DNA of 64,000 nt from the NCBI RefSeq assembly GCF_032191835.1, contig NC_083227.1, forward strand, positions 27,714,001-27,778,000. Reading direction: 5' to 3'. The notes under the pieces are model-generated. The model saw only the letters and a program-made list of their open reading frames with translations. It was not told the origin of the DNA and searched no databases. Positions 22,913-60,528 of the stretch are shown in pieces (position 1 is the first letter of the stretch; every line of letters begins with the position of its first letter). The translations under genes were made by a program, and so were the position numbers. This DNA comes from Heteronotia binoei. Its lineage: Eukaryota.

Positions 22913-23326
<414 letters not shown>

Positions 23327-24546
23327 TTACTCCCTTCTGTGAATTCTGTTGTGTGTATTAAAATCTGAACTGCTCCTAAAACCCTTTCCACATTCCATAC
23401 ATTTATATGGCCTCTCGCCTGTGTGGACTCTTTGATGTGTATTAAGGCTTGAGCTCTGATTGAAGCTTTTCCCGCAATCCAGGCATTTATATGGCTTCTC
23501 CCCTGTGTGGATTCTTTCATGTGTTGTAAGGCTTGTATTGATACGGAAGCTCTTTCCACACTCTAAGCATTTATACGGCTTTTCTCCTGTGTGGACACTT
23601 TGGTGTACCTTTAGGTGGGAGCTCTGACTGAAGCCTTTCCCACACTCCTGGCATTTAAAGGGTTTCTCTCCAGAATGCATTCTTCGGTGAGAAATAAGGT
23701 GTGGACTTTGAGAGAAGCATTTCCCACACACTGTGCACTCATAGGGTTTCTCCCCTGAGTGAGTTCTCTGATGTAAAGTGAGGGCTACCTTCCAACTGAA
23801 GGTCCTTCCACACTCCAGGCACTCATATGGCTTCTCCTTTGAGTGAAATTTCTGATGGGAAGTGAGGCACACGCTCCATCTGAAGGTCTTTCCACACTCC
23901 AGGCACTCATATGGTCTCTCCTTTGTGTGGACTCTCTGATGGGAAGTGAGGGCTGTGCTCCAGCGGAAGCTCTTTCCACATTCCAAACATTTATATTGTT
24001 TCTCCTCTGAATGGATTCTCTCATGCGAATTCAAACTGCTCTTATAACTGAACCTCTTGCCACACTCAGAACACTGGCACGGTTTTTGCACTGTGTGGGT
24101 TCTTTTATGGGAAGTAAGGTTTTCACTCAGACTAAAAAGTGTTTTGGACTCTGAACTCATGGAATGTTCTTCCCTCATATGGATTCTCTGGTGAGAAGTG
24201 AGGCTTGCAAACCTGCCAAAGCCCTTTCCACATTCAGAATACTTATACATTTCATCCCCTGTGTGGATTCTCTGATGGGAAGAAGAGCTGGATTCATAAC
24301 TCAAGACATCTCTGCTTTCAGAATGCTTATTCCTTCTCTTTCCTTTGCTGTATTTTTCTTGGGCTGGATTTTCAAGAATGCCAGCTTGGAAAACGACAGC
24401 GTGACTCCCTGAATTTTCTGCTTTGCTTTCTTCCTGCTTCTTTGACAGTTCTGGATTTCTGGAAGGCTTTTTCACCACAACATGGCTGGTCATTACAAAA
24501 GACACCACACAGCCCTCACTATAATTCTCCTCATCCTGGCTGTTAC
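23327..24546 (-). CDS. Gene 2 zinc-finger exon (9 intact fingers)
   Basis: ORF 23327-24508. Acceptor tttcaccag|GT at 24547/24546, phase 1 and in frame. Ends HRRE-TAA. Confidence 0.95.
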
Positions 24547-25180
24547 CTGGTGAAATGAAGATTTCTGGTTAGTAGGGGAAATAAGTCTATAATCTGCAGT
24601 TGTAACAGAGCAAAAATTTTTGGCAGAGATAAGAAATACTAAGTTCTTTTCTCCATTTTAGTTTAGTTTCTAAACTGGCAATGGGATACAGGCAACACTG
24701 GCACTCCTCATCAACGATTTTCATCTGGAATTCAATGCTTCCCTTTCACAGAGCAGCCGAAAAATACTTATACAGAAAGGAACAATATATGCTTAAACTA
24801 ATGGGTCCCACAAGTGGGTACATTTATTTTATTTTTAAAAAAAATATGAACCACTCACACAGTGAAAAAGAATGGTTTATCAGAGAGCAGAGTTCAGCAC
24901 CACAGAAGGAACCACACGCAGGGATGAGGGCAGAGTTCCATCGGGCCGGTGGTCATCTTTATAGCCCTCTATAGTTTGGGACCAACAGTCTTGAAGGGTT
25001 TCCACTGATTTATGAACCTACCTGACCACTATGGACATCTTTGAATGCTCTGCTTCAAGGGCCTCACTTGAGGCAGTGGAAACGCAGAAGGCCTTCTTAG
25101 TTATGGCACCAGAACTCTGGAGCCCTCGCCCCTGTTCCTCCTTGAAGCCATTCCCTCAGTGGTTTTTCCATCCCACCTAA

Positions 25181-25446
25181 TGTTTGGTATAGTGGTTAAG
25201 TGTGCAGACTCTTATCAGAGACAACCAGGTTTGATCCCCCACTCCACCACTTGCAGCTGCTGGAATGGTCTTGGGTCAGCCATAGCTCTTGTAGAGATGT
25301 CCTTGAAAGGGCAGCTTCTGGGAGAGCTCTCTCAGCCCCACCTACCTCACAGGGTGTTTGTTGTGGGGGAGGAAGATAAAGGAGATTGTGAGCCGCTCTG
25401 ACGCTCTCAAGAGTGGAGGGTAGGATATAAATCCAATACCATCATC
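25181..25446 (+). mobile_element. Squam3-like SINE in the KRAB-ZNF intron of gene 2
   Basis: Same consensus, plus orientation, (ATC)n tail. Confidence 0.82.
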
Positions 25447-25763
25447 GTTTCATATTTTAGCTTTGGTTTTAAATAGTGCTTTTCTTCATTTTAATGGTTT
25501 TTAAGGTGCAATTGTACTATATATTTTTTAATTTGATAGCTGCATTGGAGGCGTCTATGGAGTCAGAAAAGTGGGATATACAACTGTAGAATTAAATAAT
25601 CAGTAGCATTTATCTAATATCCACACAAAATCCTTGATCATACCAGCTTACACTATGATCTGCCTTGCATCTCATTGAGAAAGGCAAACTAGAAATAAAT
25701 TAAGAAGCAACGGTAGCAGAAACCACAGCTTCCACACCTATCAAGTAAGAGAAAAAACCTTAC

Positions 25764-25890
25764 CCAGAGAGGCCACAGTCCTGTAATTCTCCACCATGAC
25801 TTCTCTATACAAAACCCTCTGGTCAGGAGTCAGCAGCACCCACTCCGCTGTCGTGAAACGCACAGCCACCTCCTCGAAGGAAATTGGATG
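25764..25890 (-). CDS. Gene 2 KRAB-A exon
   Basis: 127 bp with canonical AG/GT. Translates [42 protein letters not shown]+G. Confidence 0.95.
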
Positions 25891-26544
25891 CTGAAAAAGA
25901 AGGAAGATGCTTTTTTCCCCTCATAATGTAGCTCACAGGTAAACCGCCCACTCCTGCCCAAAGATGCTTTTTCTCACAACACAGAAAAAAGAACACTGAA
26001 CCAGCCCACTCTCCTATCAAGGTCATTACTGTCCAGTCCAACCTGCAGAGGCTCAGGTTGGTATTGAACCAAGGGCCTTCCGCATGCCAAGCGGACACTC
26101 TACCTCTGAGCCTCTTCTCCAGCAACTGCAAAGATGAAAACAGGAACAATGCAAGATGCCATCTACCGAGTCAGACCCTTGCTGGACCCTCATAAATACA
26201 ATTACTAGTTTTTAAATCTGTTGATTGTTGGGCCATCAAGGTCACTACTATCGATTCTGACCACTACCAGCAGCTCTCCAGGATCTCAGGGGGGAGGTCT
26301 TTCACATTTCCTCCTACCTGATCCTGAATAGGCTCCAGTTATCAGAAAGCCACAGAACAGATTATCTTTCTCTCTTGATTCATGCATAATTAGGACCCTT
26401 TTCTCTGAGGAGAAATCTAAAGCAGCTTACAAAGAGAAAAAGGTCCCAAATCATAAGGACAAACAGGAATGGTTCCTTCCAGCCCTGCTGGAAGAAAAGG
26501 AGGCACCAAACATCTTTTCACACAGCTGGGGATCCATCCCTTAC

Positions 26545-26627
26545 CTGAGCGAGCTGCATCTTAAATGTTTCCACTCCACTCCAAAGAAAAGACATTCTGG
26601 AACCCGACTCTAATGCTCTTCCACTAC
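26545..26627 (-). CDS. Gene 2 linker/start exon
   Basis: 83 bp, open throughout in phase 1: (G)SGRALESGSRMSFLWSGVETFKMQLAQ. Conserved ATG at 26559 plus an upstream in-frame ATG. Predicted protein 453 aa from the conserved ATG. Confidence 0.8.
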
Positions 26628-26835
26628 CTGTAGGGAGATATATATATATATCTTCAGTGGTTTACTTCCTTCAGACCTCCTCTTTCTCCTCAAAGCGGAG
26701 CAAAAAGTGGTTTAAATGACTCTCTTCTCCTCCATTCTCTCCTCAGACAAAGGTAGGTAAGTCAGAGACCATACAACTAATCCAAAGCCAGCCAGGAACC
26801 TTTAGTGGCTGAGTGGACATTTGAACCTCCTAGAT

Positions 26836-27444
26836 CAGGGGTGTCAAACATGCAGTTTGGGGGCCAAATCAGGCCCCTGGAGGGCTACTATCAGGCCCCC
26901 GAGCAACTGGCTGTCATCTGCTTCCTTCTCCCTCTCTCTTGCTTCCTTCTGCATAACAGCTTGCTTTGCCAGGCTTGCTCAATTGCACAGGAGCTACAGA
27001 GCAAAACCTCTATTTTCTCCATTGGCTGAGGCTCCTCCCTTGGGGAGGAAGGGGAGAGGAATAGCTTGCTTTGCCAGGCTCTCTCAGTTGCACAGCAGAA
27101 CTACTGGGCCAAACCTCTCTTCCTGCTACTGACTGAGGCTTCCCACCCATCCCAGCCCGTGGGGAAGGAAGGAAAAAGCCAGAGCTTCCTTTGCCCAGTT
27201 CCCATGGGAGAAATACAAATAAAGCACCTTTAAGACCCATGAGTACTAATGTTTTAAGCATGTTTTAAGTTTTTAAAAATATATATGTGTTCTTTATAAA
27301 ATCTATATCTTTGCTACCTAATCTTAAATAGGTACCCACATGGCCCAGCCCGACATAGCTCAGTCCAACCCGACATGGCCCGGCCCCTCAAGGTCTCATT
27401 TATGTCAGATGTGGCCCTCATAACAAGCGAGTTCAACACCCCTG
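26836..27444. mobile_element. hAT-Charlie-type MITE
   Basis: TIRs CAGGGGTGTCAAAC/GTTCAACACCCCTG and TSD TCCTAGAT at 26828-26835 and 27445-27452. Empty site at ~45866 in gene 3. Confidence 0.9.
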
Positions 27445-27987
27445 TCCTAGATCCTAGCCAGAGACTCTGTCCATGAAACCACACTGGCTCTGAGGGCTCA
27501 GAGAAATTCTTAAAAGTTCCTTTGTTTTAAATGAGGAGGTATTTCCACTCTCCCTGTCTGCCTTCCCCCCCCCCCCCCCCACAACAGGGTACTTGTCAGC
27601 AGCTTCTGCTGTTCCCCTCATTTTATCCTCTGTAAAATAGGGTAAACTGAGTGTGCATAACCCGCTCAGCTTCCATGGTAGAGAGGGCATTAGAACCTCA
27701 GTCTCCCAGATCACCTCCCCAGGTTTTGACTTTCTCAGGGAGGGAGAGACTGAAGGGAGAGAGAGACACCCACATGCAGGACTTACTTTAAAAGTGAGGC
27801 CTACTCTGCACGTCTGATGGGCCCAGAATCTCACAGCACCGATAACTTCAGCTGGTGAATACCAAAACAACTCAATGCCAAAACAGTCCAGTATTTGACT
27901 CCCTCAGACATGTTTCTTGACACTAGGTCTCTGTCCAAAGCGGGGATGATTACATGGAAGCCATGCTGGGTCTCTGACTGCCAGAGA

Positions 27988-28140
27988 AGATGATGATGAT
28001 GATATTGGATTTATATCCCACCCTCCATTCCGAATCTCAGAGCGGCTCACAAGCTCCTTTATCTTCCTCCCCCACAACAGACACCCTGTGAGGCGGGTGG
28101 GGCTGAGAGGACTCTCACTCCCTTTCAAGGACAACTTCTG
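27988..28140 (-). mobile_element. Partial Squam3-like SINE
   Basis: 3' half of the SINE with (ATC)n tail, interrupting the paralog of the 6753-6947 block. Confidence 0.8.
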
Positions 28141-29520
28141 CCACTCTAACTTAATTTTACGATATTCTGTAATCTATTTACTCATTAACTGGACACTTTT
28201 GTACACATTACTTAATAAATCACCACTTTCCTTAATTTCCTGGAACTCAGTGCCTGGATAGGGGAAAAATAGTTCACTTTAGATTATCAAAAAAGATACA
28301 TACTATTAAGAAGATCTGCACTCATTTTATTTGCTGCTAACCTAATCTGTCGAGTTAGTTTTCCAAGTAAAAATATATTGTGCATAGTGTTCCCTCTAAG
28401 ATGAGTTTATGTGAGCTAGCTCAGTTTTTTAGCCTCTGGCTCACACATTTTTTGTCTTAGCTCAGCCTTCTAAGGAAAGATGGCCCCTGAGCACACTAAT
28501 TTAGGCAGTAGCTCACAACTTTAATGCCTGTAGCTTTGCAAAGTGTAATTTTTGCTGGCAACTTAGAGGGAACATTGAAGGCAGTCAAAAACCCCCACAC
28601 AATCCTTAATTGAATTGCACCTGTTTTTACTTACCCCCACCCAGTTTCTATTTCTCTCTTGTTTTAATTACTCCTCCCCCCAGAAACAACACACACACCC
28701 TTCGCCCCACCACACCCTGTCTCCAAATTGCACCTGAAAACTCTGTGCTTCCAACCAGACCTTCTAAACCAAACCTCTCCAAAGTTCCTGCACAAAGAGT
28801 TCTTCTGCACGTGGGAAACAGGGAAGCCGGAGGGTGCATTTGCAATTCATACCTCCAACCCCCCCTTCCTCTCTAGGGATTTCGATCTTGCTTTTTTTAA
28901 CCCTAGGAGCACCCAAAAGCTCAGTCTTTTACGGAGGATGAGCCAAATCAGGATTGAATCCTGGGCTGGGAAGCGGCTTTTTTGGAAGAGAGACCAGCAA
29001 GGAGGAGAGGGAGAAGAACCTAGGATTTTCCTAGGCAGGCTAGCAGCAGCAACCTCCCCACCACCCCTGCAAAATATGGCGGAAAATGCATTTGGGTGAA
29101 AAGGGATTTGCAATACCAGGAGTTGGAGGGGAACAGCAAGTGGGGGGGGGGAGGGGCGGGCAGAGCCCGAGTTTTATTTTTTTAGGGCTCCGAACAATCT
29201 TGCAACATGCGCTGCCCCCTTCCCGGCACATTCCTCCTCCCACACATACCATCTCAGGAGCCACGCAAAAAAGTTCACGCCGATTCTGAAATTACTCATC
29301 CACACACTGCATGGGTGGGAAATGCCTGCCTTTGCAAGATGGGTGTAATAACAACCACCCGGCTGAGATTCCACACGCTGGTTTGCTAACCACCTTGCAA
29401 CTGGCTTGGTCAATCAAAAAGGGATTCGCCTGTTAAATGCTCACTTACCAACGCAGTTGCAAACGTTGGACCCATTCACTTTAAAACGTTATTTCCCCAG
29501 CCTTTTTTCATTTCACTTAC

Positions 29521-29788
29521 TTCATTATGTTGGATAGATCCAGGTGGGCACCGGTCTGAAGCAGGAGAACAAAGCAGGAGTCCAGGGGCACCTTTCAGAC
29601 CAACAAAGTGGGAAAGCTGCAGCGCTGCAGTCCAAACTCTGCTCACGACCATGCAAGTTGCAGCCAGCGGATCCCGCCAGAGGAAGCAGCCGCGTTTGCC
29701 CAGCAGCCTTTTGGAGCTTTGCTTTTCCTTTCACAAGAAGTATCCCCTCCCGCCTGCCCATGCGCAAGGAACTCTGGGACTTGTAGTT
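29521..29788 (-). promoter_or_regulatory. Gene 2 putative promoter and non-coding first exon
   Basis: Donor |gtaagtga at 29521/29520. AACTACAAGTCCCAG at 29774-29788 next to an NRF1-like GCCCATGCGCA. Confidence 0.65.
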
Positions 29789-29847: not shown

Positions 29848-30120
29848 AGCCAGTGTGGTGTAGTGGTTAAGTGTGCGGACTCTTATCTGGGAGAACTGGG
29901 TTTGATTCCCCACTCCTCCACTTATGCTGCTGGAATGCTGGGTCAGCCATAGCTCTGGCAGGGGTTGTCCTTGAAAGGACAGCTGCTGTGAGAGTCCTCT
30001 CAGCCCCACCCACCTCACAGGGTGTCTGTTGTGGGGGAGGAAGGGAAAGGAGATTGTGAGCTGCTCTGAGACTTTTGAGTCGAGGGCGGAATATAAATCC
30101 AATGTCATCGTCGTCTTCTT
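29848..30120 (+). mobile_element. Squam3-like SINE immediately upstream of the gene 2 promoter
   Basis: Same consensus, plus orientation. Confidence 0.85.
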
Positions 30121-31446: not shown

Positions 31447-31728
31447 GGAGAGTTCGGTGTAGTGGTTAAGTGTGCGGACTCTTATCTGCGAGAACCGGGT
31501 TTGATTCCCCACTCCTCCACTTGCACCTGCTAGCATGGCCTTGGGTCAGCCATAGCTCTGGCAGAGGTTGTCCTTGAAAGGGCAGCTGCTGTGAGAGCCC
31601 TCTCCAGCCCCACCCACCTCACAGGGTGTCTGTTGTGGGGGAGGAAGGTAAAGAAGATTGTAAGCCGCTCTGAGACTCTTCGGAGTGGTGGATGGGATAT
31701 AAATCCAATATCATCATCATCTTCTTCA
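31447..31728 (+). mobile_element. Squam3-like SINE
   Basis: Same consensus. Confidence 0.85.
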
Positions 31729-32095: not shown

Positions 32096-32969
32096 TGTGG
32101 CGGAACCGGCCCGATTCTGACTTCAGACCCGGTCCCGTCAGCTCCCTATTGAGTCGCCAACTCCTGGAGGGAGCTATTCCTCCTCCTCCCCTTGGGCTCG
32201 CTGCCACCACCTGCTCAGTCCCGGGGTTCAGATTGAGAGGAACAGGACTCCCAATCCCCCTCTCCTGCTATGAGGCTAGGCCTCAAGGTCCTCTGCCACC
32301 CTGCACTTGGGTTTCACAGAGACCTCAGCGCTTCTTTGGGGCACCCCTGGAGGATTGGCACCTTATCCAACTGCATGCCTTCCCCCTTCCCCGGGGCCCC
32401 CTTCTCAAAACAGCGTGGTCTAAAGCGGTCTGGGGATCTAGGTGGTACAGAGATTGATTGCCAGCATTTAAACAGTAAAAATATATTTATTTAAAAAGAG
32501 AAAAAGATAGGAAAAGGAAAACAAACCAAAAACAGTTGCCTTTAAAAAGTTAACACAGCCTAGTACAGCACAACACAGCTCAGCAAACAGCATAACAAAA
32601 TAAAGGTGGTTTTTAAACGCATCGTATTGTCCCTGGTCTATACTTGATCTGCCTAAGAGAATGACTTACTTTGTCTTACTGCCTGGAGGCCTCATTTTCC
32701 TGAGCAGGCCCCCCACAGGCCGGAGCTCAGAGGCAAGCAGCCTCTCTTCCCGAGCCTCTGCTGCAAACTGAGAAACTCTTCCTGCCTAGCACATGGCAAG
32801 AACAACAGCCCTTCCTGCCTCTCTAGGAGACTTTCCCCCTAGCGTTGTTGGTTTGGCTCAGGAAGGGAGGGGGGGAGTGAGGGGAAGGCTACAAAGCCTG
32901 CTGAATGGATTTACTGATCCCTGCCTTTTTGGATGAAGCACCAACACTCTCAGATGGCGTTTCTCCACA
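32096..32969 (-). repeat. 3' LTR (874 bp)
   Basis: Direct repeat of 35611-36483, preceded on the minus strand by the PPT AAGGAGGGGGAAG. Confidence 0.97.
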
Positions 32970-33163
32970 CTTCCCCCTCCTTAAATTCTGAGCCAGAGGG
33001 GTTGCCTCCTACAGAGGTGACCCCGTAGCAGAATCCAAACAAACAAGGAGAAACCCATTAACCAAAACATTACACAAACATTCAGGTATTTCTCCAATAA
33101 TACACAAAGTCCAGCACCCTAGGTGCCCATGTCCTTTCTGGCCAACAAGTCGCATTGCTGCAT

Positions 33164-35461
33164 TCAGAAGGAATGTCCAGTCTTTAAGATGTACTCCTCC
33201 GTCTCCCAGGACCACCTCTGGAGTTTGGTGCTCTCCCTCCGTTGCTGCTGTTGCTGGGGTGAGGGGTCCATCAAAGGAGGAAATCCCTGGCCCCACATAT
33301 GGGGTTGGAAACTGCCCAGTTCCCACACAGTTGCTTCTTCTTTATCCTTCATTGGTGGAATGTTCCCTCTGTCCACTCTGTCCTCCCAGAAAACCACCTC
33401 TGGGGCTCCAAACAATTGCTGTCCCAGCTTCTTTTTGTCTCCTTCCTTCCTACCTCTATGCAACACCATGGACCTCGCAGAGACTGGCTGTGGTACATTC
33501 ACCTGCACCACTTGAACTGCCTTTCCCATTTTCTCCATAGCCCCCACACAGGTAGCATCGTCTAGGTCATCCACAATCACATGGGGTCCCTCCCATTCCA
33601 CTTTCCGTTCACCAGTATGAAGGGGTAGGAAATCCATCACCCTATCCCCTGTCTCAACTTCTGAGAACTCCACTTCCTGGTCCCTTGCCAACTCACACAG
33701 TGGTTCCAGCCTCGGGTCACTTTGAACCTCAGACAGGAACATTTCTGGCTGCCCCAGACTTCCTATCATCTGTTCCTTCAAGCCACCCCTAGTCCCACTG
33801 TTTCCAGAACACTCAGCCAAAGTTTGATCTGGGTTCTCCACCCCCTCAGTTGGTTTTTCAGTGTCAGCCAACTGAGCTCCTTCCTGCCTGGAAGTCTCCA
33901 CCGCATCCTGCTGCCCTTGCGGAAATTGGCACCCCTCTTCCCATTGGGCACACCCTCCTGCAGAGCTTGAGACAGGCTGGTCCTCCCCCTCCCTAGTTAG
34001 TGGTGAGGTGGCTTCCCTAAAGTTGCCTTCCTCCCCCCACCTTCCCCTGAGGGTTTGGCTTGGGTTCTCAGTCCCCTCGGTTGGTTTCTCAGCACTACCA
34101 AACTGACCCCCCTCTTGCTTGGAAGGTCCCACAGCTTCCCAGGACTCCTGTCTGCCCTGCTTCAAGACGACCTGTTTTGAGAGCGTCTCGGACGATCCCA
34201 CTTCCTGATCCACAGCTACTTGGTGAACCGGTTCCAACCTAAGGCCACTCCAGACCTCCTTCTGGAACCGCTCCCGTTCCCCCAAGCCTTCAGCTATGTG
34301 CTCCTCTGAGCCCACATTAGCCTTGCTGCTCTCAGAACCTCCTGTGAAATCTCCACTCTCCACCTTGGTCTCTTCAGCTTGCACATCCTTTATGCTAGAC
34401 AGGTTCCCTTCCTCGCTAGGAACATCCACAGCCTCCTGCTGCACTTGGGGAAAGCTACACCCCTTCTCCCCTTGAGAACACCCTACTCCAGGGCTTGAGA
34501 CAGGCTGGTCCTCCCCCTCCTGGGTGACTGCCCTCTCTTCGTCCTCAGTAACCTGGGTTGTTTCCCCCTCCCTGGTTGGTGGTGAGGTGGCTTCCTTAAA
34601 GTTGCCTTCCTCCTCCCACTTTCCCCTGGGGGTTTGGCTGTGGGTTACAGCATTGATAGAGTACTGGCCAACCAACAAATCCCGGCCCAATAACACTGGA
34701 ACTGTTTGTTCCTTCATTACCCCACATTCAGAATAGGATTTACCTTCTTGTGGAGCCAAACCCCTGAACTGCTTTCGGGAGTGGTCTGGCCCCAGTTTAA
34801 ACCTTTTAAATACAGTGGCCTTATAGGCCGCAAAAGTTATCCCCCCATCTTCCACAGGCATGCTGTAATAGATGGCTGAAAGCTCTCCAGTCAGGTTGCT
34901 ACAGAGGTAAGACATATAGTCCTCCTCTGCAATCCCCCACTGTTTGGCTGCCCTCTCAAAGTTGGAGAGGTACATGGAGGGGTCTTCTCCCTCTTTGTAC
35001 ACTGCAAAGTCTTTGGGGGTGACTTGGATCTCTTTGCTTAGTTCAGCTTCCAGACGTAGCACCTCAAGCTCATGGCGACGTTGCTCTTCCTGTTCCCGTC
35101 TGCGGATATCAGCTCTCTCTTTTTCTTCCTGTCTGCGGATCTCAGCTTTCTCTCTTTCCTCCTGCCGGCGGATCTCTGCTTCTTCCTGTCTGCGGATCGC
35201 ATCCCTCTCTGCTTGTCGTTCCTCTCTCTCTCGTTCCTCCTTGATACGCATTCTCTCCAGTTCCATCTGTAGCCGCAAGGTTGCTTCTGACTGGGTGGGG
35301 GCCACTTTTGCAGGTGCCCCTGCATGCTCAAGATGCTCCAACAGGAGGACTTGCATATCTACTACAGTCAGGTTGTCACACTCCAGCTCTTGCTTTGCGC
35401 ACTCTTCCTGGAGCTGTGGCTTTGTCATCTTCAGGATTTCCAGTTTCTTAGCACGCTCCAT
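33164..35461 (-). CDS. 765-aa retrotransposon polyprotein remnant (Gag N-terminus, PR end, repeat linker, IN GPY/F tail)
   Basis: E/R coiled coil, capsid-like YKEGEDPSMYLSNFERAAKQWG...LTGELSAIY...FKLGPDHSRKQFRGL, protease C-terminus VPVLLGRDL, and GPY/F-like GDRVMDFLP...WEGPHVI. RT, RNase H and the integrase catalytic core are absent. Confidence 0.8.
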   Translation of the reverse strand: MERAKKLEILKMTKPQLQEECAKQELECDNLTVVDMQVLLLEHLEHAGAPAKVAPTQSEATLRLQMELERMRIKEEREREERQAERDAIRRQEEAEIRRQEEREKAEIRRQEEKERADIRRREQEEQRRHELEVLRLEAELSKEIQVTPKDFAVYKEGEDPSMYLSNFERAAKQWGIAEEDYMSYLCSNLTGELSAIYYSMPVEDGGITFAAYKATVFKRFKLGPDHSRKQFRGLAPQEGKSYSECGVMKEQTVPVLLGRDLLVGQYSINAVTHSQTPRGKWEEEGNFKEATSPPTREGETTQVTEDEERAVTQEGEDQPVSSPGVGCSQGEKGCSFPQVQQEAVDVPSEEGNLSSIKDVQAEETKVESGDFTGGSESSKANVGSEEHIAEGLGERERFQKEVWSGLRLEPVHQVAVDQEVGSSETLSKQVVLKQGRQESWEAVGPSKQEGGQFGSAEKPTEGTENPSQTLRGRWGEEGNFREATSPLTREGEDQPVSSSAGGCAQWEEGCQFPQGQQDAVETSRQEGAQLADTEKPTEGVENPDQTLAECSGNSGTRGGLKEQMIGSLGQPEMFLSEVQSDPRLEPLCELARDQEVEFSEVETGDRVMDFLPLHTGERKVEWEGPHVIVDDLDDATCVGAMEKMGKAVQVVQVNVPQPVSARSMVLHRGRKEGDKKKLGQQLFGAPEVVFWEDRVDRGNIPPMKDKEEATVWELGSFQPHMWGQGFPPLMDPSPQQQQQRRESTKLQRWSWETEEYILKTGHSF

Positions 35462-35590
35462 CCTAACTAGCTAAACTTTCCCTACTCCAGTTGACCCGAA
35501 AAGAAAACAAAACCGCTGTTGCTTCCTCTGGGTGCTTGCACGCATCAAAAACCAAAAATGCCTGGCCAATCAAGTTCTCTGTTTGTTCTC

Positions 35591-35608
35591 ATCCCACCGC
35601 TGCCGCCA
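35591..35608 (-). other. Primer-binding site complementary to the tRNA-Leu(AAG/UAG-type) 3' end
   Basis: TGGCGGCAGCGGTGGGAT lies 2 nt after the 5' LTR. It matches 17/18 to the recalled tRNA-Leu end ATCCCACCGCTGCCACCA. Confidence 0.8.
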
Positions 35609-35610
35609 AG

Positions 35611-36483
35611 TGTGACGGAACCGGCCCGATTCTGACTTCAGACCCGGTCCCGTCAGCTCCCTATTGAGTCGCCAACTCCTGGAGGGAGTATTCCTCCTCC
35701 TCCCCTTGGGCTCGCTGCCACCACCTGCTCAGTCCCGGGGTTCAGATTGAGAGGAACAGGACTCCCAATCCCCCTCTCCTGCTATGAGGCTAGGCCTCAA
35801 GGTCCTCTGCCACCCTGCACTTGGGTTTCACAGAGACCTCAGCGCTTCTTTGGGGCACCCCTGGAGGATTGGCACCTTATCCAACTGCATGCCTTCCCCC
35901 TTCCCCGGGGCCCCCTTCTCAAAACAGCGTGGTCTAAAGCGGTCTGGGGATCTAGGTGGTACAGAGATTGATTGCCAGCATTTAAACAGTAAAAATATAT
36001 TTATTTAAAAAGAGAAAAAGATAGGAAAAGGAAAACAAACCAAAAACAGTTGCCTTTAAAAAGTTAACACAGCCTAGTACAGCACAACACAGCTCAGCAA
36101 ACAGCATAACAAAATAAAGGTGGTTTTTAAACGCATCGTATTGTCCCTGGTCTATACTTGATCTGCCTAAGAGAATGACTTACTTTGTCTTACTGCCTGG
36201 AGGCCTCATTTTCCTGAGCAGGCCCCCCACAGGCCGGAGCTCAGAGGCAAGCAGCCTCTCTTCCCGAGCCTCTGCTGCAAACTGAGAAACTCTTCCTGCC
36301 TAGCACATGGCAAGAACAACAGCCCTTCCTGCCTCTCTAGGAGACTTTCCCCCTAGCGTTGTTGGTTTGGCTCAGGAAGGGAGGGGGGGAGTGAGGGGAA
36401 GGCTACAAAGCCTGCTGAATGGATTTACTGATCCCTGCCTTTTTGGATGAAGCACCAACACTCTCAGATGGCGTTTCTCCACA
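35611..36483 (-). repeat. 5' LTR (873 bp)
   Basis: By eye it differs from the other LTR only at one substitution (tgtga/tgtgg) and one 1-bp indel (gagtattcc/gagctattcc). Confidence 0.97.
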
Positions 36484-41955: not shown

Positions 41956-41970
41956 AAGAACTAATCATTT

Positions 41971-42391
<421 letters not shown>

Positions 42392-43614
42392 TTACTCCCT
42401 TCTGTGAATTCTGTTGTGTGTGTTAAGGTCTGAACTGCACCTAAAATCCTTTCCACATTCCATACATTTATATGGCCTCTCACCTGTGTGTACTCTTCGA
42501 TGTGTATTAAGGCTTGAGCTCTGACTGAAGCTTTTCCCACAATCCAGGCATTTATATGGCTTCTCGCCTGTGTGGATTCTTTCATGTGATGTAAGGCTTG
42601 TCTGGACACTGAAACTCTTTCCACACTCCAAGCATTTATATGGCTTTTCTCCTGTGTGGCTTCTTCGGTGTATATTCAGGTGTGTGCTCTGACTGAAGCC
42701 TTTCCCACACTCCTGGCATTTAAAGGGTTTCTCTCCAGAATGCATTCTTCGGTGGGAAATAAGGTGCGGACTCTGAGAGAAGCATTTCCCACACACTGTG
42801 CACTCGTAGGGTTTCTCCCCTGAGTGAGTTCTCTGATGTGAAGTGAGGGATGCGCTCCAACTGAAGGTCCTTCCACACTCCAGGCACTCATATGGTTTCT
42901 CCTTTGTGTGGAATCTCTGATGGGAAGTGAGGCACGTGCTCCATCTGAAGGTCTTTCCACACTCCAGGCACCCATATGGTCTCTCCTTTGTGTGGATTCT
43001 CTGATGGGAAGTGAAGCCTGCACTCCAACGGAAGCTCTTTCCACATTCCAAACATTTATATTGTTTCTCCTCTGAATGGACTCTCTCATGCAAATTTAGA
43101 GAGCTCTTACAGCTGAATCTCTTGCCGCACTCTGAACACTGCCATGGTTTTTGCCCCGTGTGGGTTCTTTGATGGGAAGTAAGGTTTTCACTCAGACCAA
43201 AAGTATTTTCACACTCTGAATTCTCAGATGGTTCCTTTCTCTTATGGATTCTCTGGTGAGAAGTGAGGCTTGCAAGCCTGCCGAAGGGCTTTCCACATTC
43301 TGAGCATTTGTACGTTTCATCCCCTGCATGGATTCTCTGGTGGGAAGAAAAGCTGGATTCACAGCTCAAGACTTCTCTGCTTTCAGAATGTCTATACCTC
43401 CTTTTTCCTTTGGCACATGGTTCTTGGGATAGCTTTTCAAGAAGGATGCCAGTGTGGAAAACTACAGACTGATTCTCTGACTTCTCTGCCTTGCTTTCTT
43501 CCTGCCTCTTAGACTGTTCTGGATTCCTGGAAGGCTTTTCCGCCACTTTATAGCAGGCCATTATGAAAGAGACCACACAGCGCTCACTATAATTCTCATC
43601 ATCCTGCCTGTTAC
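42392..43614 (-). CDS. Gene 3 zinc-finger exon (10 intact fingers)
   Basis: ORF 42392-43576. Acceptor ttccatcag|GT at 43615/43614, phase 1 and in frame. Ends HRRE-TAA. Confidence 0.95.
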
Positions 43615-44674
43615 CTGATGGAAGAAAGACTCCTGATTAGTATGGGAAATAAGTCTGTAATCTGCAGCCATAACAGAGCTAACTTTTCCGCAAATTTAGG
43701 AAACGCCGAGTTATTTTAGTTTGGTTTCTAAACTGGCAGTGGGATACAGGCAACTTTGGCGCTCCTCATCAACAATTTTCTTCTGGAATTCAATGCTTCC
43801 CTTTCACAGAGCAGCCCAAAAATTATACATAAAGGTATAAAATACACTTGACCTAATGGGTTTCAAGTGAGTGGGTTCATTTATTTCATTTTTTTAAAAA
43901 AAATATGTACCACTCACAGACTAAAGGCTTTAATTTATTACTTTCTTCTTATCATGAACGACTCACAGGTATTAAAGAAAGGTTTATCAGAGAGCAGAGT
44001 TTAGCACCAGAGAAGGCACCACCCACATGGATGAGAGTAGAGTTCCACAGGGGCTGGTGTTCGCCTTTAAAGCCCCTCTATGGTTTGGGACCAACAGTCT
44101 TGAAGGGCTTCCACTGACTTATGAGCCTACATAACCACTATGGACATCTTTGAATGTTCTGCTTCAAGGGCCCCTACATTCTGAGGCAGTGGCAAAGTTA
44201 GGAGAGGGCCTTCTTAGTTTTGGATCCGGAACTCTGGAACCCTCTCCTTGGGGAGATCCCCCTGTTTCTTCCTGAAGCCGTTTTCCGCCAGTGGGTGAAG
44301 ACTTTGTGATTTCATTTGACATTCCCTCAGAGTTTTTTCCATCCCACCCCACGTTTATTCTTTCGTATTTTAGCTCTAGGTTTTTTATACTGCTTTTCGT
44401 CATTTTAATGGTTCTTAAGATGTGATTGGATTATATACATTTTAATTCAATAGCAGCATTGGTAACTCTTATGGAGTCAGAAAAGTGGGATGTAACACTG
44501 TAGAATGAAATAAAAAAATTTGCAGCACGTATTTAATATTCACACAAATTCCTCAATTCTATTAATTGTATCAACTAATGCTGTAAAAGTTCCCTGAGTC
44601 TCAGTGAAAAAGGCAGACTACAAATAACTTAAATAAAGACGCAACAGTGGCAGAAACCACAGCTTCCACACCTA

Positions 44675-44851
<177 letters not shown>

Positions 44852-45151: not shown

Positions 45152-45428
45152 AAGAAGAAGAAAACCGTAGATTTATATTCCACCCTTCTCTCTGAATCAG
45201 AGTCTCAAAGTGGCTTACAACGTCCTTTATCTTCTTTCCCCACAACAGACACCCTGTGAGGTAGGTGAGGCTGAGAAAGCTCTGACAGAAGCTGCCCTTT
45301 CAAGGACAACTCTGTGAGAGCTATGGCTGACTCAAGGCCATTCCAGCAGCTGCAAGCAGAGGAGTGGGGAATCAAATCCAGTTCTCCAAGATAAGATTCG
45401 ACACACTTAACCACTACACCAAACTGGT
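45152..45428 (-). mobile_element. Squam3-like SINE (more diverged)
   Basis: Same architecture with more substitutions. Confidence 0.8.
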
Positions 45429-48207: not shown

Positions 48208-49195
48208 TAACATAAGAGAAGCCATGTTAGATCAGGCCAATGGCCCATCCAGTCCAACACTNNNNNNNNNNNNNNNNNNNNNNNNNNNNNNNNNNNNNNN
48301 NNNNNNNNNNNNNNNNNNNNNNNNNNNNNNNNNNNNNNNNNNNNNNNNNNNNNNNNNNNNNNNNNNNNNNNNNNNNNNNNNNNNNNNNNNNNNNNNNNNN
48401 NNNNNNNNNNNNNNNNNNNNNNNNNNNNNNNNNCTCTGCTCCATATTTTTATCTAAACCCCTCTTGAAGGTGGCTATACTTGTGGCCGCCACCACCTCCT
48501 GTGGCAGTGAATTCCACATGTTAATCACCCTTTGGGTGAAGAAGTACTTCCTTTTATCCATTTTAACCTGTCTGCTCAGCAATTTCATCAAATGCCCATG
48601 AGTTCTTGTATCGTGAGAAAGGGAGAAAAGTACCTCTTTCTCTACTTTTTCCATCCCATGCATTATCTTGTAAACCTCTATCATGTCACCCCGCAGTCGA
48701 CGTTTCTCCAAGCTAAAGAGCCCTAAGCGTTTCAACCTTTCTTCATAGGGAAAGTGTTCCAGCCCTTTAATCATTCTAGTTGCCCTTTTCTGCACTTTCT
48801 CCAATGCTATAATATCCTTTTTGAGGTGCGGCGACCAGAACTGCACACAGGACTCCAAATGAGACCGCACCATCGATTTATACAGGGGCATTATGATACT
48901 GGCTGATTTGTTTTCAATTCCCTTCCTAATAATTCCCAGCATGGCGTTGGCCTTTTTTATTGCAAGTGCACACTGTCTTGACATTTTCAGTGAGTTATCT
49001 ACCACGACCCCAAGATCTCTCTCTTGGTCAGTCTCTACCAGTTCACACCCCATCAACTTGTATTTGTAGCTGGGATTCTTGGCCCCAATGTGCATTACTT
49101 TGCGCTTGGCCACACTGAACCTCATCTGCCACGTTGACGCCCACTCACCCAGCCTCAACAGATCCCTTTGGAGCGCCTCACAATCCTCTCTGTTT
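48208..49195 (-). mobile_element. 5'-truncated CR1 LINE
   Basis: ORF 48232-49206 is the CR1 ORF2 C-terminus (YKSMVRSHLESCVQFWSPHLKKD...LFSLEKRRLRGD). It is closely similar to the 13945 copy. Contains the gap 48262-48433. Confidence 0.92.
48262..48433. other. Assembly gap (N run)
   Basis: 172 Ns at the same CR1 3'UTR position as the 14030 gap. Confidence 1.
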
Positions 49196-50114
49196 CTCAG
49201 ATGCACTCAAGAGTTATTTAACTGCGCTTCGTTTCTTGGAGAGAAGGCCAAAGGCTGTGTTCAGAAGGCTGCTTGAGACTGTTGCTATACTAGGGCTACT
49301 AATATCCTCAGATGGGCTATGGATGCCAATCTCCAGGTTTCCCTAGAATTTCGGCTCATCTGCAGACTAGAGATCCATTCCTAGGGACAAAATGGGGGCT
49401 TTGGAGGGTAGACTCTATGGCATTGTACCCCATTGATTTCCCTGTCCTTTCCGGGGGGTCTATCCCCAAATCTACAGGAGTATCCTATCCTGGATCTGCA
49501 ACCCTACCTCCCACATACCCTGATAGTGGCTAGGGCAAACCAGGCAATCCTAAGGTGGGGTGTGGAAATCTCCTGGAACTACAACCGATCAGCACACTGC
49601 AGAGATCAATTGTCCAGGAAAGCAGGGTTCCTTTGGAGGGGCGACTCCAGGGCATGACACCTAGTTGAGATCCCCACCCTCCACCAAATCTCATCATCTT
49701 CAGCCCCCTCCCCTCACAAAAAAAATCACCACAGATTTCTCTATCTGGGATTTGGCATCTGTAGCTCTCAAGTAGTGCTTCTGATCTCACTAGTCATCTG
49801 GACAATAGATGCCTAGATAAAGGGATGTAGAATTCTGTAAACAGCTATAAACATCCTAAGACCTGATCTACAATGCCCCCTCTCAATAATAATAATAATT
49901 ATTATTAATAATGTATGGTTGCCAGGTCAGTGTTGGAAAATACTTGGAGACTTTGTGGGTGGAGCCGGGAAAGGGCAGGGTTTGGGGAAGGGAGGGGCCT
50001 CAGCATGGTCCAGTGCCACAGTGTCCACCCTTCCCAGCAGCCATTTCCTCCCGGGGAGCTGATCTCTGCCAGCTGGAGATCAGTTGGAAAGGTGGGAGAT
50101 CTCCAGGCTCCACC

Positions 50115-53200: not shown

Positions 53201-53975
53201 CTGGTTCTGGCCTCCCTCGGGGTCCTGATACAGGTTCAGACTCCCCGGTTCGGCTGATAGACTACCTCAAAGCCAGCCCTCTCAGGGCTGGCCCACCTTT
53301 TCCTTGTAAAGGAATAGGCTTAAAAATACATATACAGTCATGTCCAATTCTCAAATTATTATTGTAGCGCTATCTCCCGCCCAGGAGATGGCAACTGTTG
53401 ACTGGACACATCACATATCTGACGTACTAAGCGTTGCCTCAGGTTGGCGGCTGAGGCGGCATATTGGAGAAGGAGGAGGGAATATGCAAATCACTTTCCT
53501 ACTGAAATGGAAATTCCAAGCCTATGTTTGTATCGGCCTCACCAGAAAACCCACAACATATTGATACTGGCAAAACATAATTCACAGTAACATTTTAGTG
53601 GTGGATTGGGGAACACACAGCAGCGCTTAGTCGCTGTAACTGATAAGCACTCTCCATCGCGTGGCCCGGCTTGGCTGTGATGGGCCCAACCATTCTTCTC
53701 CCTCCATTTTCCATCTCTCTCTGCATCCGGGACTTGGGCTGAGGCATGTACAGAGTGTGCAAATGCAAATGCCCTGAGCCCGAGGTCGTCTGGGGGCAAT
53801 AATTAGGACATTAATCAAACAAAACAGTCGTGTTTGTGGCTTGAAGACCAAAAGAGACATTTAATTGTCGGAAAAGAAAATGGAAGACCTGATTTGCAAG
53901 AAAACAATGACTCTGCCGGCCTAGTTTTAACCAAAAGGCTAGGTGGCGGAAAAAGGATGTGCTGAAAATAATGCC
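50275..53975 (-). mobile_element. Unassigned ~3.7-kb insert, possibly an ERV/LTR element remnant (candidate LTR 50275-50937)
   Basis: Non-paralogous, SINE-free block. The left ~660 bp reads TGTCACC...TTAACA on the minus strand, with a TATA-like site near 50707 and AATAAA near 50433. No second LTR or recognisable ORF. Confidence 0.35.
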
Positions 53976-54357
53976 AGGTAGCAGAGATATGAACTTTATA
54001 AAGACAAGAACAATTAAGAGATTTTTAAAAACTTAAAACTTGCTTAAAAAATTAGCACTTGTTGGTCCTAATGGTGCTTTCTTTGCATCTCTCCTGTGAG
54101 ATCCAGGGAACTGGGCATAAGCTGCTCTGGCTCTTTCCTTCCTTCCCCAGGGGACCAGGAGGGGGAGGAGTCTCAGCCAATAGGCTTAGCTCAGTAGCTC
54201 TGCTGTGTGATTGAGCAAGCCGGGCAGAGTTAGCTGTGATGCAGAAGGAAGCAAGAGAGAGGGAGAAGGAAGCAGATGGCAGCCAGATGCTTGGGGGCCT
54301 AATAGGAGCCCACCTGGGGCCTGATTCAGCCCCTGGGCCACATGTTTGACATTCCTG
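53975..54357. mobile_element. Partial hAT-Charlie-type MITE (inverted)
   Basis: Reverse-complement match to 26836-27444, ending gtttgacattcctg. Confidence 0.75.
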
Positions 54358-54483
54358 GATTACTGCATTTGAACTGCAGGTGGAAAACAACCAAGAATTT
54401 TCCTGTGATCTCTGGTGGTAAAACAGCCTGCCAAGAGGGCCACACTCTAGGAATCTCTGCTGCCTAGTCTCTATGATGTAGCC

Positions 54484-55066
54484 CAGGGGAGTCAAACATG
54501 CAGTTTGGGGGCCAAATCAGGCCCCCGGAGGGCTCCTATCAGGCCCCCAAACAACTGGACCCCTTCTCCCTATATCTTGCTTTGCAAGGCTTGCTCATCA
54601 ATTGCACAGGAGCTACAGAGGAGCACAGGAGCTACAGAGCAAAGTCTCTATATTCTCCATTGGCTGAGGCAATGGGTAGGAAGGGGCCGGGGAGGATACC
54701 TTACTTTGCCAGGATCTCTCAATTGCACAGCAGAGCTACTGAGCCAAGCCTCTCTTCCTTCTATTGGCTGAGTCTCCTCCCCCTCCTGATTCCCTGGGAA
54801 AGGAAGGAAAGAGCCAGAGTTTCCTTTGCCCAATTCCCTAGATCCCATGGGAGAAATACAAAGAAAGCCAATGAGTGCTAACGGTTTAAACATGTTTTTA
54901 GTTTAAAAAAAAAATTGTGTTTGTGTTCTTTGTAAAATTTCTCTTTCTGCTACCTGTACACACATGGCCCAGCCTGACATGGCTCAGCCCAACCTGACAT
55001 GGCCTGGCCCAACAATGTCATTTTTGTCAGATTCGGCCCTCATAACAAATGAGTTTGACACTCCTG
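54484..55066. mobile_element. hAT-Charlie-type MITE
   Basis: TIRs CAGGGGAGTCAAAC/GTTTGACACTCCTG. Same family as 26836-27444. Confidence 0.85.
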
Positions 55067-55219
55067 CTCTAGGCTGATCCTGCACTGAATAGGGGGTTTG
55101 GACAGATGGCCTGTATGGCCCCTTCCAACTCTATGATTCTACAATATAACTTGGGGCTTCTGTGACATATTTGACATCTGTAAAGCTTGTTGTATTTCAA
55201 AAACTCCTAGTCTGATCAT

Positions 55220-55663
55220 GGTGGTGGTGAGGGGTCCGGAGACCAAATCCTACAAGGAAAGGTTGAAGAAGCTGGGCTTGTTTAGCCTGGAGAGGCGGCA
55301 GAGAGGTGATATGATCACCATCTTCAAGGACTTGAAGGGCTGTCATTATAGAGGATGGTGTGGAATTGTTTTCTGTGGTCCCAGAAGGTAGGACCAGAAC
55401 CAATGGGTTGAAATTTAATCAAGAGAGTTTCTGGCTCAACTTTAGGAAGCACTTCCTGACGATTACAGCAGTTTCTCAGTGGAACAGGCTTCCTCAGGAG
55501 GTGATGGGCTCTCCTTCCTTGGGAGGTTTTTGAACAGAGGCTGGATGGCCGACAGTAATGAAGATCCTGTGAATTTAGGGGGAGGTATTTGTGAATTTCC
55601 TGCATTGTGCAGGGGGTTGGACTAGATGACCCTGGAGATCCCTTCCAACTTTATGATTCTATG
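55220..55663 (+). mobile_element. CR1 3' fragment overlapping the stop codon of gene 4
   Basis: CR1 ORF2 end (ggcttgtttagcctggagagg...) through the terminal ccttccaactttatgattctatg. The flanks rejoin to the paralog consensus gatcat-t-tctatg. Confidence 0.9.
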
Positions 55664-57397
55664 TCTGTGATTCCTCCTCTTTGTGCATTCTTTGATGTTG
55701 TATCAGATACCATCTCTGTACAAATCTTTTCCCACAGTCCCTGCATTCATGTTTTTTCTCTTCACTGTGGACTATGTGGTGTTTTGTGAGCTGTGACTTG
55801 GTGGCGAATTTCTTTCCACACTGCAAGCATTTAAATGGCTTCACTCCTGTGTGGATACTTCGATGTATATTAAGGCTTGTGCTGTGACTGAACCTTCTCC
55901 CACAATCCAGGCATTCATATGGCTTCTCCCCTGAGTGGATTCTTTCATGTGATTTAAGGTGTGTAGAGATACGGAAACTCTTTCCACACTCCAAGCATTT
56001 ATATCGCTTTTCTCCTGTGTGGACGCTTTGGTGCACCTTCAGGTGTGAACTCTGACTGAAGCCTTTCCCACATTCCTGGCATTTAAAGGGTTTCTCTCCA
56101 GAGTGGATTCTTCGGTGGGAAGAAAGGTGTGGATGCTGAGAGAAGCATTTCCCACACACTGTGCATTCGTAGGGTTTCTCCCCTGAGTGAGTTCTCTTAT
56201 GTAAAGTGAGGGATGAGGTCCAACTGAAGGTCCTTCCACACTCCAGGCACTCATAGGGCTTCTCCTTTGTATGGAATCTCTGATGGGAAGAGAGGGCCGA
56301 ACTGACAGAGAAGCTCTTCCCACAAATCAAGCATTTATATGGTTTCTCCCCTGAGTGGGTTCTCTGGTGTGAAGAGAGGGCTGTGCTCCAACTGAAAGTC
56401 CTTCCACACTCCAGGCACTCATAGGGCTTCTCCTTTGTGTGCAGCCTCTGATGGGAATTGAGGGATGTGCTCCAGTGGAAGCTCTTCCCACATTCCAAGC
56501 ATTGATATCGTTTCTCCCCTGAATGGATTCTCTGATGCATATTCAGAGCACTCTTACAGCTGTACCTCTTGCCACACTCTAAACACTGGCAAAGTTTTTG
56601 CCCTCTGTGCGTTCTTTGGTGTATCTTCAGGCTGGAGCTCTGACTGAAGCCTTTCCCACACTCCTGGCATTTATAAGGTTTTTCCCCAGAGTGGATTCTT
56701 CGGTGGGAAATAAGGTGTGGACTCTGAGAGAAGCATTTCCCACACACTGTGCACTCAAAAGGTTTCTCTCCTGAGTGAGTTCTCTGATGTGAGGTGAGGG
56801 CCGCGCTCCGGCAGAAGCTCTTTCCACATTCCAAACATTTATATTGTCTCTCCTCTGAATGGACTCTCTCATGCAAATTCAGATGACTCCTACAGCTGAA
56901 TCTCTTGCCACACTCTGAACACTGCCATGGTTTTTGCCCTGTGCGGGTTCTTTGATGGGAAGTAAGGTTTTCACTCAGACCCAAAGTATTTTCACATTCT
57001 GAACTCTCGAATGGTCTCTTTCTCTTATGGATTTTCTGATGAGAAGTGAGGCTTGCAAGCCTGCCGAAGCCCTTTCCACATTCAGAGCATCTGTACGTTT
57101 CATCCCCTGCATAGATCCTTGGATGGAAAGAAAAGCTGGATTCACAAACCAAGACTTCTCTGCTTTCAGAATGTTTAGTCCTCCTCTTTCCTTTGCTGTA
57201 TTTTTCTTGAGCTGGATTTTCAAGGGAGATGCCAGCCTGCAAAGCCACAGACTGATTCCCTGACTTCTCTGCTCTGCTTTCTTCCCACCTTTTTGACTGT
57301 TCTGGATTTCTGGAAGGCTTTTCCTCTGCTTCGTGGTTGGTCATTAGGAAAGAGACCACACACTGCTTGCTATAATTTTCCTCATCCTGCCTGTGAC
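55659..57397 (-). CDS. Gene 4 zinc-finger exon (16 intact fingers)
   Basis: ORF 55659-57359. Acceptor ttcctccag|GT at 57398/57397, phase 1 and in frame. Confidence 0.96.

Positions 57398-60351: not shown

Positions 60352-60528
<177 letters not shown>

What the first reader, a model, noticed from the sequence alone, without database searches (positions are those of the whole stretch)
23327..57397. The four zinc-finger exons form a complete 2x2 mosaic of N-terminal and C-terminal types
Seen: the N-terminal part groups genes 1+2 (HAVVFQ, SYES, [13 protein letters not shown], CQCS..FSY) against 3+4 (NQSV, CESSFS, KRK, SECENTxGL, WQCS..FSC, HERVHSEE). The intron just before the acceptor also groups 3+4. 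The C-terminal part groups 1+4 ([27 protein letters not shown]) against 2+3 ([32 protein letters not shown]). The KRAB exon ([10 protein letters not shown]) and a deletion deeper in the intron group 2+3, while the linker-exon TGA groups 1+3. All four N/C combinations exist, which a single duplication tree cannot produce without homoplasy. Inference: gene conversion or unequal crossover between neighbours shuffles finger modules combinatorially.
Basis: partly seen in the sequence, partly recalled or inferred. Interest (0 to 1): 0.7.

Follow-up and report, generated by a model that had tools for sequence, protein, structure and literature searches.

The report
Gene-conversion patches in gecko KRAB-ZNF cluster
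Four neighbouring KRAB zinc-finger repressor genes of a lizard-type genome have swapped short pieces of their last exon, so different parts of the genes give different family trees; the mosaic is real but is an ordinary, already documented way in which this gene family evolves.

Summary
The window holds four tandem KRAB-C2H2 genes on the minus strand. Their zinc-finger exons are g1 456-1981, g2 23327-24546, g3 42392-43614 and g4 55659-57397. From about 120 nt before the splice acceptor to the middle of the third finger (~640 nt), the 12|34 tree wins (AU p<0.001 for the other two). The KRAB-A exon, the 5' exon, the deeper intron and the rest of the finger array all favour 14|23 (AU p 0.005 to 3e-5). 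A permutation test of the patch gave 0 of 300.

The neat "2x2" is partly an orthology artefact. The 1+4 C-terminus is the ancestral state. It also survives in g2 and g3 as decayed fingers behind a shared four-finger insertion that carries a premature stop. So 14|23 simply means that g2 and g3 are sisters.

The conflict is one internal patch flanked on both sides by the background tree. This is the signature of short ectopic gene conversion, not of single-breakpoint hybrid genes. At least two events are needed: a g3-lineage to g4 transfer that landed out of register and added fingers, and a short g1-g2 tract. GENECONV studies have already reported such tracts among poly-ZF paralogs (PMC2604467). 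Low novelty.

The parts
456..1981 (-). g1 zinc-finger exon (13 canonical fingers; A-type start, ancestral-type tail)
23327..24546 (-). g2 zinc-finger exon (A-type start; ends at the shared premature stop HRRE*)
42392..43614 (-). g3 zinc-finger exon (B-type start; the same premature stop). The acceptor at 43614 is confirmed by a spliced contig.
55659..57397 (-). g4 zinc-finger exon (16 canonical fingers; B-type start, ancestral-type tail)
3907..4033 (-). g1 KRAB-A exon ([10 protein letters not shown])
   Evidence: PF01352, E 2e-22
25764..25890 (-). g2 KRAB-A exon ([10 protein letters not shown])
   Evidence: E 2.9e-19
44698..44824 (-). g3 KRAB-A exon ([10 protein letters not shown]). The donor at 44698 is confirmed by a spliced contig.
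60375..60501 (-). g4 KRAB-A exon ([10 protein letters not shown])
   Evidence: E 1.9e-22
1480..2111 (-). g1 copy of the 12|34 patch (about -120 of the intron to mid finger c03)
24045..24681 (-). g2 copy of the patch. Identity to g3 falls from 0.93 to 0.78-0.83 here and returns to 0.92 after it.
43110..43739 (-). g3 copy of the patch. The best g3-g4 fragment is 43081-43762.
56893..57530 (-). g4 copy of the patch. The best g3-g4 fragment is 56864-57553.
1575..1599 (-). g1 side of the short g1-g2 tract at the c01/c02 junction (12 consecutive concordant polymorphic sites). The g2 side is 24140-24164.
22904..23323 (-). g2 relic fingers behind the stop (c08', c09', c10', c11, c12), decayed
41969..42388 (-). 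g3 relic fingers behind the stop, decayed
56592..56927 (-). g4 extra finger block u03-u06. It groups with g2/g3. u04 (56760-56843) is a c04/c06 hybrid and u06 (56592-56675) is a c08/c02 hybrid.
48262..48433 (.). Assembly gap inside a CR1-like LINE copy between g3 and g4. It is not part of any compared block and was not filled.

Best explanation
Four tandem, same-strand KRAB-C2H2 paralogs have a background history in which g2 and g3 are sisters, and g1 and g4 branch off separately (unrooted 14|23). On this background lie a few short ectopic, non-crossover exchanges (interlocus gene conversion) at the 5' end of the zinc-finger exon.

Shown:
- A ~0.64 kb internal segment has a different, strongly supported topology (12|34).
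- This segment is flanked on both sides by 14|23.

Inferred sequence of events:
1. A g3-lineage segment, running from about -140 nt of the intron to the middle of finger c08, was copied into neighbouring g4. It landed out of register on g4's degenerate finger c02. This gave g4 the B-type start and extra fingers. A later in-register two-finger deletion made hybrid finger u04.
2. A short tract around the c01/c02 junction was exchanged between the neighbours g1 and g2, giving both the A type.
3. Possibly further micro-tracts in the pre-finger linker.

The '1+4 C-terminal type' needs no event. It is the ancestral tail. g2 and g3 lost it through a shared four-finger insertion that carries a stop codon.
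For: - Site-pattern series and two-breakpoint scan: inside the patch A29/B8/C2, outside A15/B14/C75, 0 of 300 permutations. Event-collapsed Fisher p = 5e-7.
- AU tests: upstream favours 14|23 (delta lnL 21, others p 0.004-0.005). The patch favours 12|34 (delta lnL 32-33, others p<0.001). Downstream favours 14|23 (delta lnL 72, others p~3e-5).
- GENECONV-like test: g3-g4 fragment of 692 columns, p=0.0034. g1-g2 run of 12 concordant sites, p=0.014.
- Sliding windows: g2-g3 identity goes 0.93, then 0.78-0.83, then 0.92. g3-g4 identity rises to 0.88-0.93.
- The 12|34 pattern includes 7 intronic and ~5 synonymous sites, so it is inherited or transferred, not convergent.
- Five-taxon trees place g4's first finger block with g2/g3 and its second block with g1 (bootstrap 75-87). 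Hybrid fingers u04 and u06 mark the junctions.
- Relic fingers behind the stop in g2 and g3 are homologous to the tail of g1 and g4.
- Short conversion tracts among poly-ZF paralogs are documented, and are frequent in chicken (PMC2604467).
Against: - The pre-finger coding part inside the patch (~300 nt) shows no g3-g4 closeness (0.81) and is star-like. A single continuous tract therefore does not fit. Separate tracts, patchy repair or later events must be assumed.
- Directions and the number of events rest on distances from 84-250 nt segments and on bootstraps of 71-87.
- No close outgroup was available. The best database relatives are ~50% identical.
- GENECONV-like p values are only marginal after correction for 12 tests.
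- Informative sites are clustered, so they are not independent.
Confidence: 0.72

Rival explanations
1. The 12|34 patch records the true duplication history: adjacent pairs 4-3 and 2-1 arose by tandem duplication. The flanks (KRAB-A, intron, 3' fingers) were later homogenised between the neighbours g2 and g3 by long conversion tracts on both sides.
For: - Gene order is 4-3-2-1, so adjacent duplicates are the simplest duplication model.
- In the patch both pairs carry apparently derived states. g1 and g2 share the Cys losses. g3 and g4 share the W at the start of c03.
Against: - It needs two long tracts (at least 3.5 kb upstream and at least 1.3 kb downstream) that spare a 0.64 kb island.
- The five-taxon trees put g4's native c03 copy (u07) with g1, and g2 with g3 plus g4's first block. 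That fits the 14|23 background.
- The pre-finger exon part does not support 12|34.
Confidence: 0.13
2. Single-breakpoint unequal crossover made hybrid (Lepore-type) genes: g2 is the 5' part of g1 joined to the 3' part of g3, and g4 is the 5' part of g3 joined to the 3' part of g1.
For: - The order g3-g2-g1 matches the expected P, Q5'/P3', Q product.
- g4's array has out-of-register hybrid fingers.
Against: Everything 5' of the patch (deeper intron, KRAB-A exon, 5' exon) groups g2 with g3, not with g1, and does not group g4 with g3. Upstream sites are C28 against A8, p=0.001, and AU rejects 12|34 there.
Confidence: 0.07
3. There was no exchange. The 12|34 pattern is homoplasy from parallel selection or a mutation-rate artefact in a fast-evolving degenerate-finger region.
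For: - 17 of 22 coding 12|34 sites are non-synonymous.
- The sites are clustered: 11 sites lie within 38 nt.
Against: - Seven intronic and about five synonymous sites show the same split.
- After collapsing clusters the contrast stays at p = 5e-7.
- The fall in g2-g3 identity is abrupt and bounded on both sides.
Confidence: 0.05
4. Chimeric assembly of paralogs.
For: - The cluster is repeat-rich and has three N runs.
- Raw WGS reads gave only ~1x depth, so the read test was not decisive.
Against: - Partners in the patch still differ by 8-11%. A mis-join would give identical stretches.
- Contigs of another sample (X1) match g3 with 0 differences over 43051-43201, across the 3' patch border.
- X1 contigs also match with 4 differences over 43246-43610, and join that stretch to KRAB-A sequence (27 nt that are identical in all four genes, so it does not show which gene's KRAB-A).
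Confidence: 0.03

Closest known systems
Interlocus (ectopic) gene conversion among tandem poly-zinc-finger paralogs, as detected with GENECONV by Emerson & Thomas 2009 (PMC2604467)
   Same: - Short tracts between paralogs of lineage-specific KRAB/poly-ZF expansions.
- Detected as local phylogenetic incongruence.
- Reported as especially common in a sauropsid (chicken).
   Different: - Here the tract covers intron, linker and degenerate fingers rather than the DNA-contacting array.
- One event appears to have landed out of register and added fingers.
Zinc-finger gain and loss by in-register or out-of-register unequal exchange within KZFP arrays ('drifting and shifting' of arrays, Kauzlaric et al. 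2017, PMC5363842; also PMC2604467)
   Same: - g4's hybrid fingers u04 and u06.
- The four-finger insertion in g2 and g3.
- Finger numbers differ among the paralogs (9 to 16 intact fingers).
   Different: In g4 the donor of the added block seems to be a neighbouring gene, not the same array (bootstrap only 75-87).
Lepore/anti-Lepore-type hybrid genes from unequal crossover (my own knowledge of the globin cluster, not tested here)
   Same: Chimeric paralogs in a tandem array.
   Different: Such a hybrid has a single breakpoint, with all upstream DNA from one parent. Here the background topology returns upstream of the patch.

Membership tests
KRAB-C2H2 zinc-finger (KZFP) genes | KRAB box encoded by a separate exon upstream of the finger exon | tested here: met
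   PF01352 hits for all four exons, E 2e-22 to 2.9e-19, all above the cut-off
KRAB-C2H2 zinc-finger (KZFP) genes | Tandem array of C2H2 fingers with TGEKP-type linkers in one large last exon | tested here: met
   9-16 canonical fingers per exon. PF00096 and PF13465 hits for g3.
KRAB-C2H2 zinc-finger (KZFP) genes | KRAB exon spliced in frame to the finger exon and transcribed | tested here: met
   For g3 only. An X1 contig removes 43615-44697 at GT..AG borders, and the frame is kept.
Interlocus gene conversion (non-crossover tract) | Significant change of tree topology along the alignment | tested here: met
   AU tests and permutation scan
Interlocus gene conversion (non-crossover tract) | The tract is internal, with the background topology restored on both sides | tested here: met
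   14|23 upstream (delta lnL 21) and downstream (delta lnL 72) of the 12|34 patch
Interlocus gene conversion (non-crossover tract) | One pair of sequences is unusually similar over a bounded fragment (Sawyer-type test) | tested here: met
   g3-g4 p=0.0034. g1-g2 p=0.014, which is marginal after multiple-test correction.
Interlocus gene conversion (non-crossover tract) | Donor and recipient identified with an outgroup, or the event seen in haplotypes | not testable with these tools
   No close orthologue in the protein collections. Vertebrate genome collections are not on hand.
Unequal-crossover hybrid gene (single breakpoint) | All sequence 5' of the breakpoint derives from one parent | tested here: not met
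   The upstream blocks group g2 with g3, and do not group g4 with g3

The most novel reading that the evidence does not exclude
The exchanged cassette (splice-acceptor region, linker, degenerate fingers c00-c02 and finger c03) is a functional module, for example a protein-interaction or regulatory surface. Under this reading it is swapped between neighbours and kept by selection, so that the cluster samples head/tail combinations of repressor proteins.
Probability: 0.06. Interest if true: 0.5.

Novelty: new member of a known kind. Interest (0 to 1): 0.25.

Why it matters
It is a clean, statistically supported example of reticulate evolution in a squamate KRAB-ZNF cluster. It warns that gene trees, positive-selection tests and orthology calls for such clusters must be made segment by segment. 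It also shows that a shared 'type' can be an ancestral leftover. It does not change what is known about how KZFP families evolve.

Tried and rejected
- **Protein searches for an outgroup.** Two searches were run, on residues 1-190 and 1-112 of the g3 exon product. They found only generic or distant zinc-finger proteins (at most ~57% identity, mostly squamates). These were too far to polarise nucleotide changes. A protein alignment with five of them helped for only a few residues.
- **Read laying.** Raw WGS runs gave ~1x depth, and most reads were partial matches from other ZNF genes. The patch borders could not be tested with raw reads.
- **One continuous g4-to-g3 tract.** Rejected because the pre-finger coding part is not g3-g4-like, and because g4's first finger block groups with g2/g3.
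- **Intragenic duplication as the origin of g4's extra fingers.** Not favoured by the five-taxon trees.
- **Origin of the last coding finger of g2 and g3 (u11).** No close relative in the window.
- **'Linker-exon TGA'.** It is one site, in the exon upstream of KRAB-A, and lies within the noise of 13|24 sites.
- Exons were searched separately by reference. The big HMMER search was not used because it was not needed.
Full report
**Anatomy**

The window carries four KRAB-C2H2 genes, all on the minus strand and collinear over their whole length. The zinc-finger exons are g1 456-1981, g2 23327-24546, g3 42392-43614 and g4 55659-57397. g1 lies outside the finding's coordinates.

Each gene has a KRAB-A exon, at 3907-4033, 25764-25890, 44698-44824 and 60375-60501 respectively. 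All four hit Pfam PF01352 with E 2e-22 to 2.9e-19. Each also has an upstream exon carrying an ATG.

A contig in public run X1 removes 43615-44697 at GT..AG borders. So g3 is transcribed, and its KRAB-A exon is spliced in frame directly onto the finger exon. I searched exons separately by reference.

Earlier notes of this scan call the genome a gecko. I did not verify the species. The closest database proteins are squamate zinc-finger proteins at about 50% identity.

**The assembly gap**

The N run 48262-48433 lies in a CR1-like LINE copy in the g3-g4 spacer. Its right flank, 48434-49199, is 92% identical to 14204-14960, which abuts another N run. The gap is more than 2 kb from the nearest block I aligned. 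Whether the two sides are continuous or in frame cannot be judged and has no bearing on the result. I did not fill it.

**Check of the observation**

The 'linker-exon TGA' is a single site in the exon upstream of KRAB-A. g1 6135-6133 and g3 45609-45607 read TGA, where g2 and g4 read TGG.

**Orthology of the C-termini**

I cut the arrays into 84-nt finger units and compared all of them.
- Behind the HRRE* stop, g2 (22904-23323) and g3 (41969-42388) continue in frame with five decayed fingers.
- These relics are homologous to fingers c08-c12 of g1 and g4.
- Relative to g1 and g4, g2 and g3 share a four-unit insertion: a second copy of c08-c10 plus a finger of unclear origin, u11. The insertion ends in a stop.
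- The '1+4 type' is therefore the ancestral tail, which g2 and g3 still carry as relics. The '2+3 type' is one shared derived change.
- In an unrooted four-gene tree, 14|23 says only that g2 and g3 are sisters.

**Test of incongruence**

I built a 3784-column four-way alignment of orthologous blocks: the 5' exon block, KRAB-A, two intron blocks, the pre-finger exon part, fingers c01-c10 assigned by unit orthology, and the tail.

Informative sites are 44 for 12|34 (A), 22 for 13|24 (B) and 77 for 14|23 (C). A two-breakpoint scan finds one patch, from about 120 nt before the acceptor to the middle of c03. In window coordinates this is g1 2111-1480, g2 24681-24045, g3 43739-43110 and g4 57530-56893.

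| Region | A (12\|34) | B (13\|24) | C (14\|23) |
|---|---|---|---|
| Inside the patch | 29 | 8 | 2 |
| Outside the patch | 15 | 14 | 75 |

The LLR is 31.9, and none of 300 permutations reached it. Collapsing clustered sites into events leaves 16/6/2 against 14/14/48, Fisher p = 5e-7.

Likelihood tests of the three topologies:

| Segment | Best tree | delta lnL | AU p for the others |
|---|---|---|---|
| Upstream | 14\|23 | 21 | 0.004-0.005 |
| Patch | 12\|34 | 32-33 | <0.001 |
| Downstream | 14\|23 | 72 | ~3e-5 |

Within the patch, only c01-c03 is strong on its own (delta lnL 42.7). The last 120 nt of the intron lean to 12|34. The ~300-nt pre-finger coding part is star-like, with 13|24 marginally best. 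That lean comes partly from a cluster of sites where g2 and g4 share EKYSKGK.

**What kind of exchange**

The conflicting segment is internal, and the background topology returns on both sides. g2-g3 identity runs 0.93, then 0.78-0.83, then 0.92. This is the signature of non-crossover ectopic conversion. It is not the signature of single-breakpoint hybrid genes, which would carry one parent's KRAB-A exon and intron as well.

The 12|34 pattern includes 7 intronic sites and about 5 synonymous sites. This argues against convergence by selection.

A Sawyer-type test gives a g3-g4 fragment of 692 columns (g3 43762-43081), p=0.0034. It also gives a run of 12 concordant sites between g1 and g2 at the c01/c02 junction, p=0.014.

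**The g4 array**

g4 carries two copies of finger c03 (u03 and u07) and two hybrid units.
- u04 is the 5' half of c04 joined to the 3' half of c06.
- u06 is the first 54 nt of c08 joined to the last 30 nt of c02.
- In five-taxon trees the first block (u03, u05, u06) groups with g2/g3, and for c03 with g3 specifically.
- The second block (u07, u12, u13) groups with g1. Bootstraps are 71-87.

**Most economical reading**

1. A g3-lineage segment was copied into neighbouring g4. Its 5' end lay about 140 nt inside the intron. Its 3' end landed out of register, with c08 on c02.
2. A short tract was exchanged between the neighbours g1 and g2 at c01/c02.
3. Further micro-tracts in the linker are possible.

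Polarity hints agree with two events.
- Distant squamate proteins and the canonical finger pattern show that the B type keeps Cys and Phe residues which the A type lost in c00 and c02.
- The W that opens c03 in g3 and g4 looks derived, because the outgroups have Y, and g1, g2 and g4's native copy u07 have C.

The directions and the number of events remain inferences from short segments. The opposite reading cannot be excluded: 12|34 could be the true history, with the flanks homogenised between g2 and g3.

**Assembly artefact**

The partners in the patch still differ by 8-11%. A mis-join of paralogs would give identical stretches.

X1 contigs from another sample match g3 in two places:
- with 0 differences over 43051-43201, across the 3' border of the patch;
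- with 4 differences over 43246-43610 plus the splice to KRAB-A.

Raw WGS reads were too sparse (~1x) and were dominated by partial matches from other ZNF genes, so they decide nothing.

**Comparison with what is known**

Tandem duplication, finger gain and loss, and short gene-conversion tracts among lineage-specific poly-ZF paralogs are established. Emerson & Thomas removed GENECONV-positive genes from their selection tests and found most chicken genes affected (PMC2604467). Kauzlaric et al. describe recombination and shifting of finger arrays in mouse clusters (PMC5363842).

This locus is a well-resolved new example of that kind. The only mildly unusual point is an apparently inter-genic, out-of-register tract that added fingers to g4.

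**Verdict**

The mechanism is ordinary, so interest is low to moderate.

Noticed in passing
window 43614 / 44698 (g3): Run X1 is labelled 'DNA?' but holds a contig with the 1083-nt intron removed at GT..AG borders. It therefore behaves as a transcriptome and shows that g3 is expressed, with KRAB-A spliced directly onto the finger exon.
   Followed up: partly
window 14030-14194 and 48262-48433: Two of the three N runs sit at equivalent places beside two CR1-like LINE copies (14204-14960 and 48434-49199, 92% identical).
   Followed up: no
window 3511-3787, 9233-9509, 20182-20457, 25182-25446, 29848-30120, 31451-31721, 45170-45427, 58077-58353, 63284-63562: A ~270-bp SINE-like repeat occurs at least nine times, in both orientations, at 80-96% identity. 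Several copies lie in the introns of the four genes.
   Followed up: no
window 32096-36483: An element with 874-bp direct terminal repeats that are 99.8% identical encloses a 765-aa ORF (33164-35461, minus strand). The ORF has no Pfam hit. The insertion is young and lies upstream of g2. It was described only, not reconstructed.
   Followed up: partly
window 23324-23407 and 42389-42472: The last coding finger of g2 and g3 (u11, which ends in HRRE*) has no close relative among the window's fingers (at most 0.73 identity). Its origin is open.
   Followed up: partly
window about 24340-24355 (g2) and 57190-57205 (g4): A cluster of 13|24 sites lies within ~12 nt of the pre-finger exon part. g2 and g4 share EKYSKGK, where g1 and g3 have EP... 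. This is either a micro-conversion between non-neighbours or a multi-nucleotide change.
   Followed up: no
window 16635-17509: A very GC-rich stretch around the N run 17088-17289, with long ORFs on both strands. It looks like a CpG island or promoter between g1 and g2.
   Followed up: no
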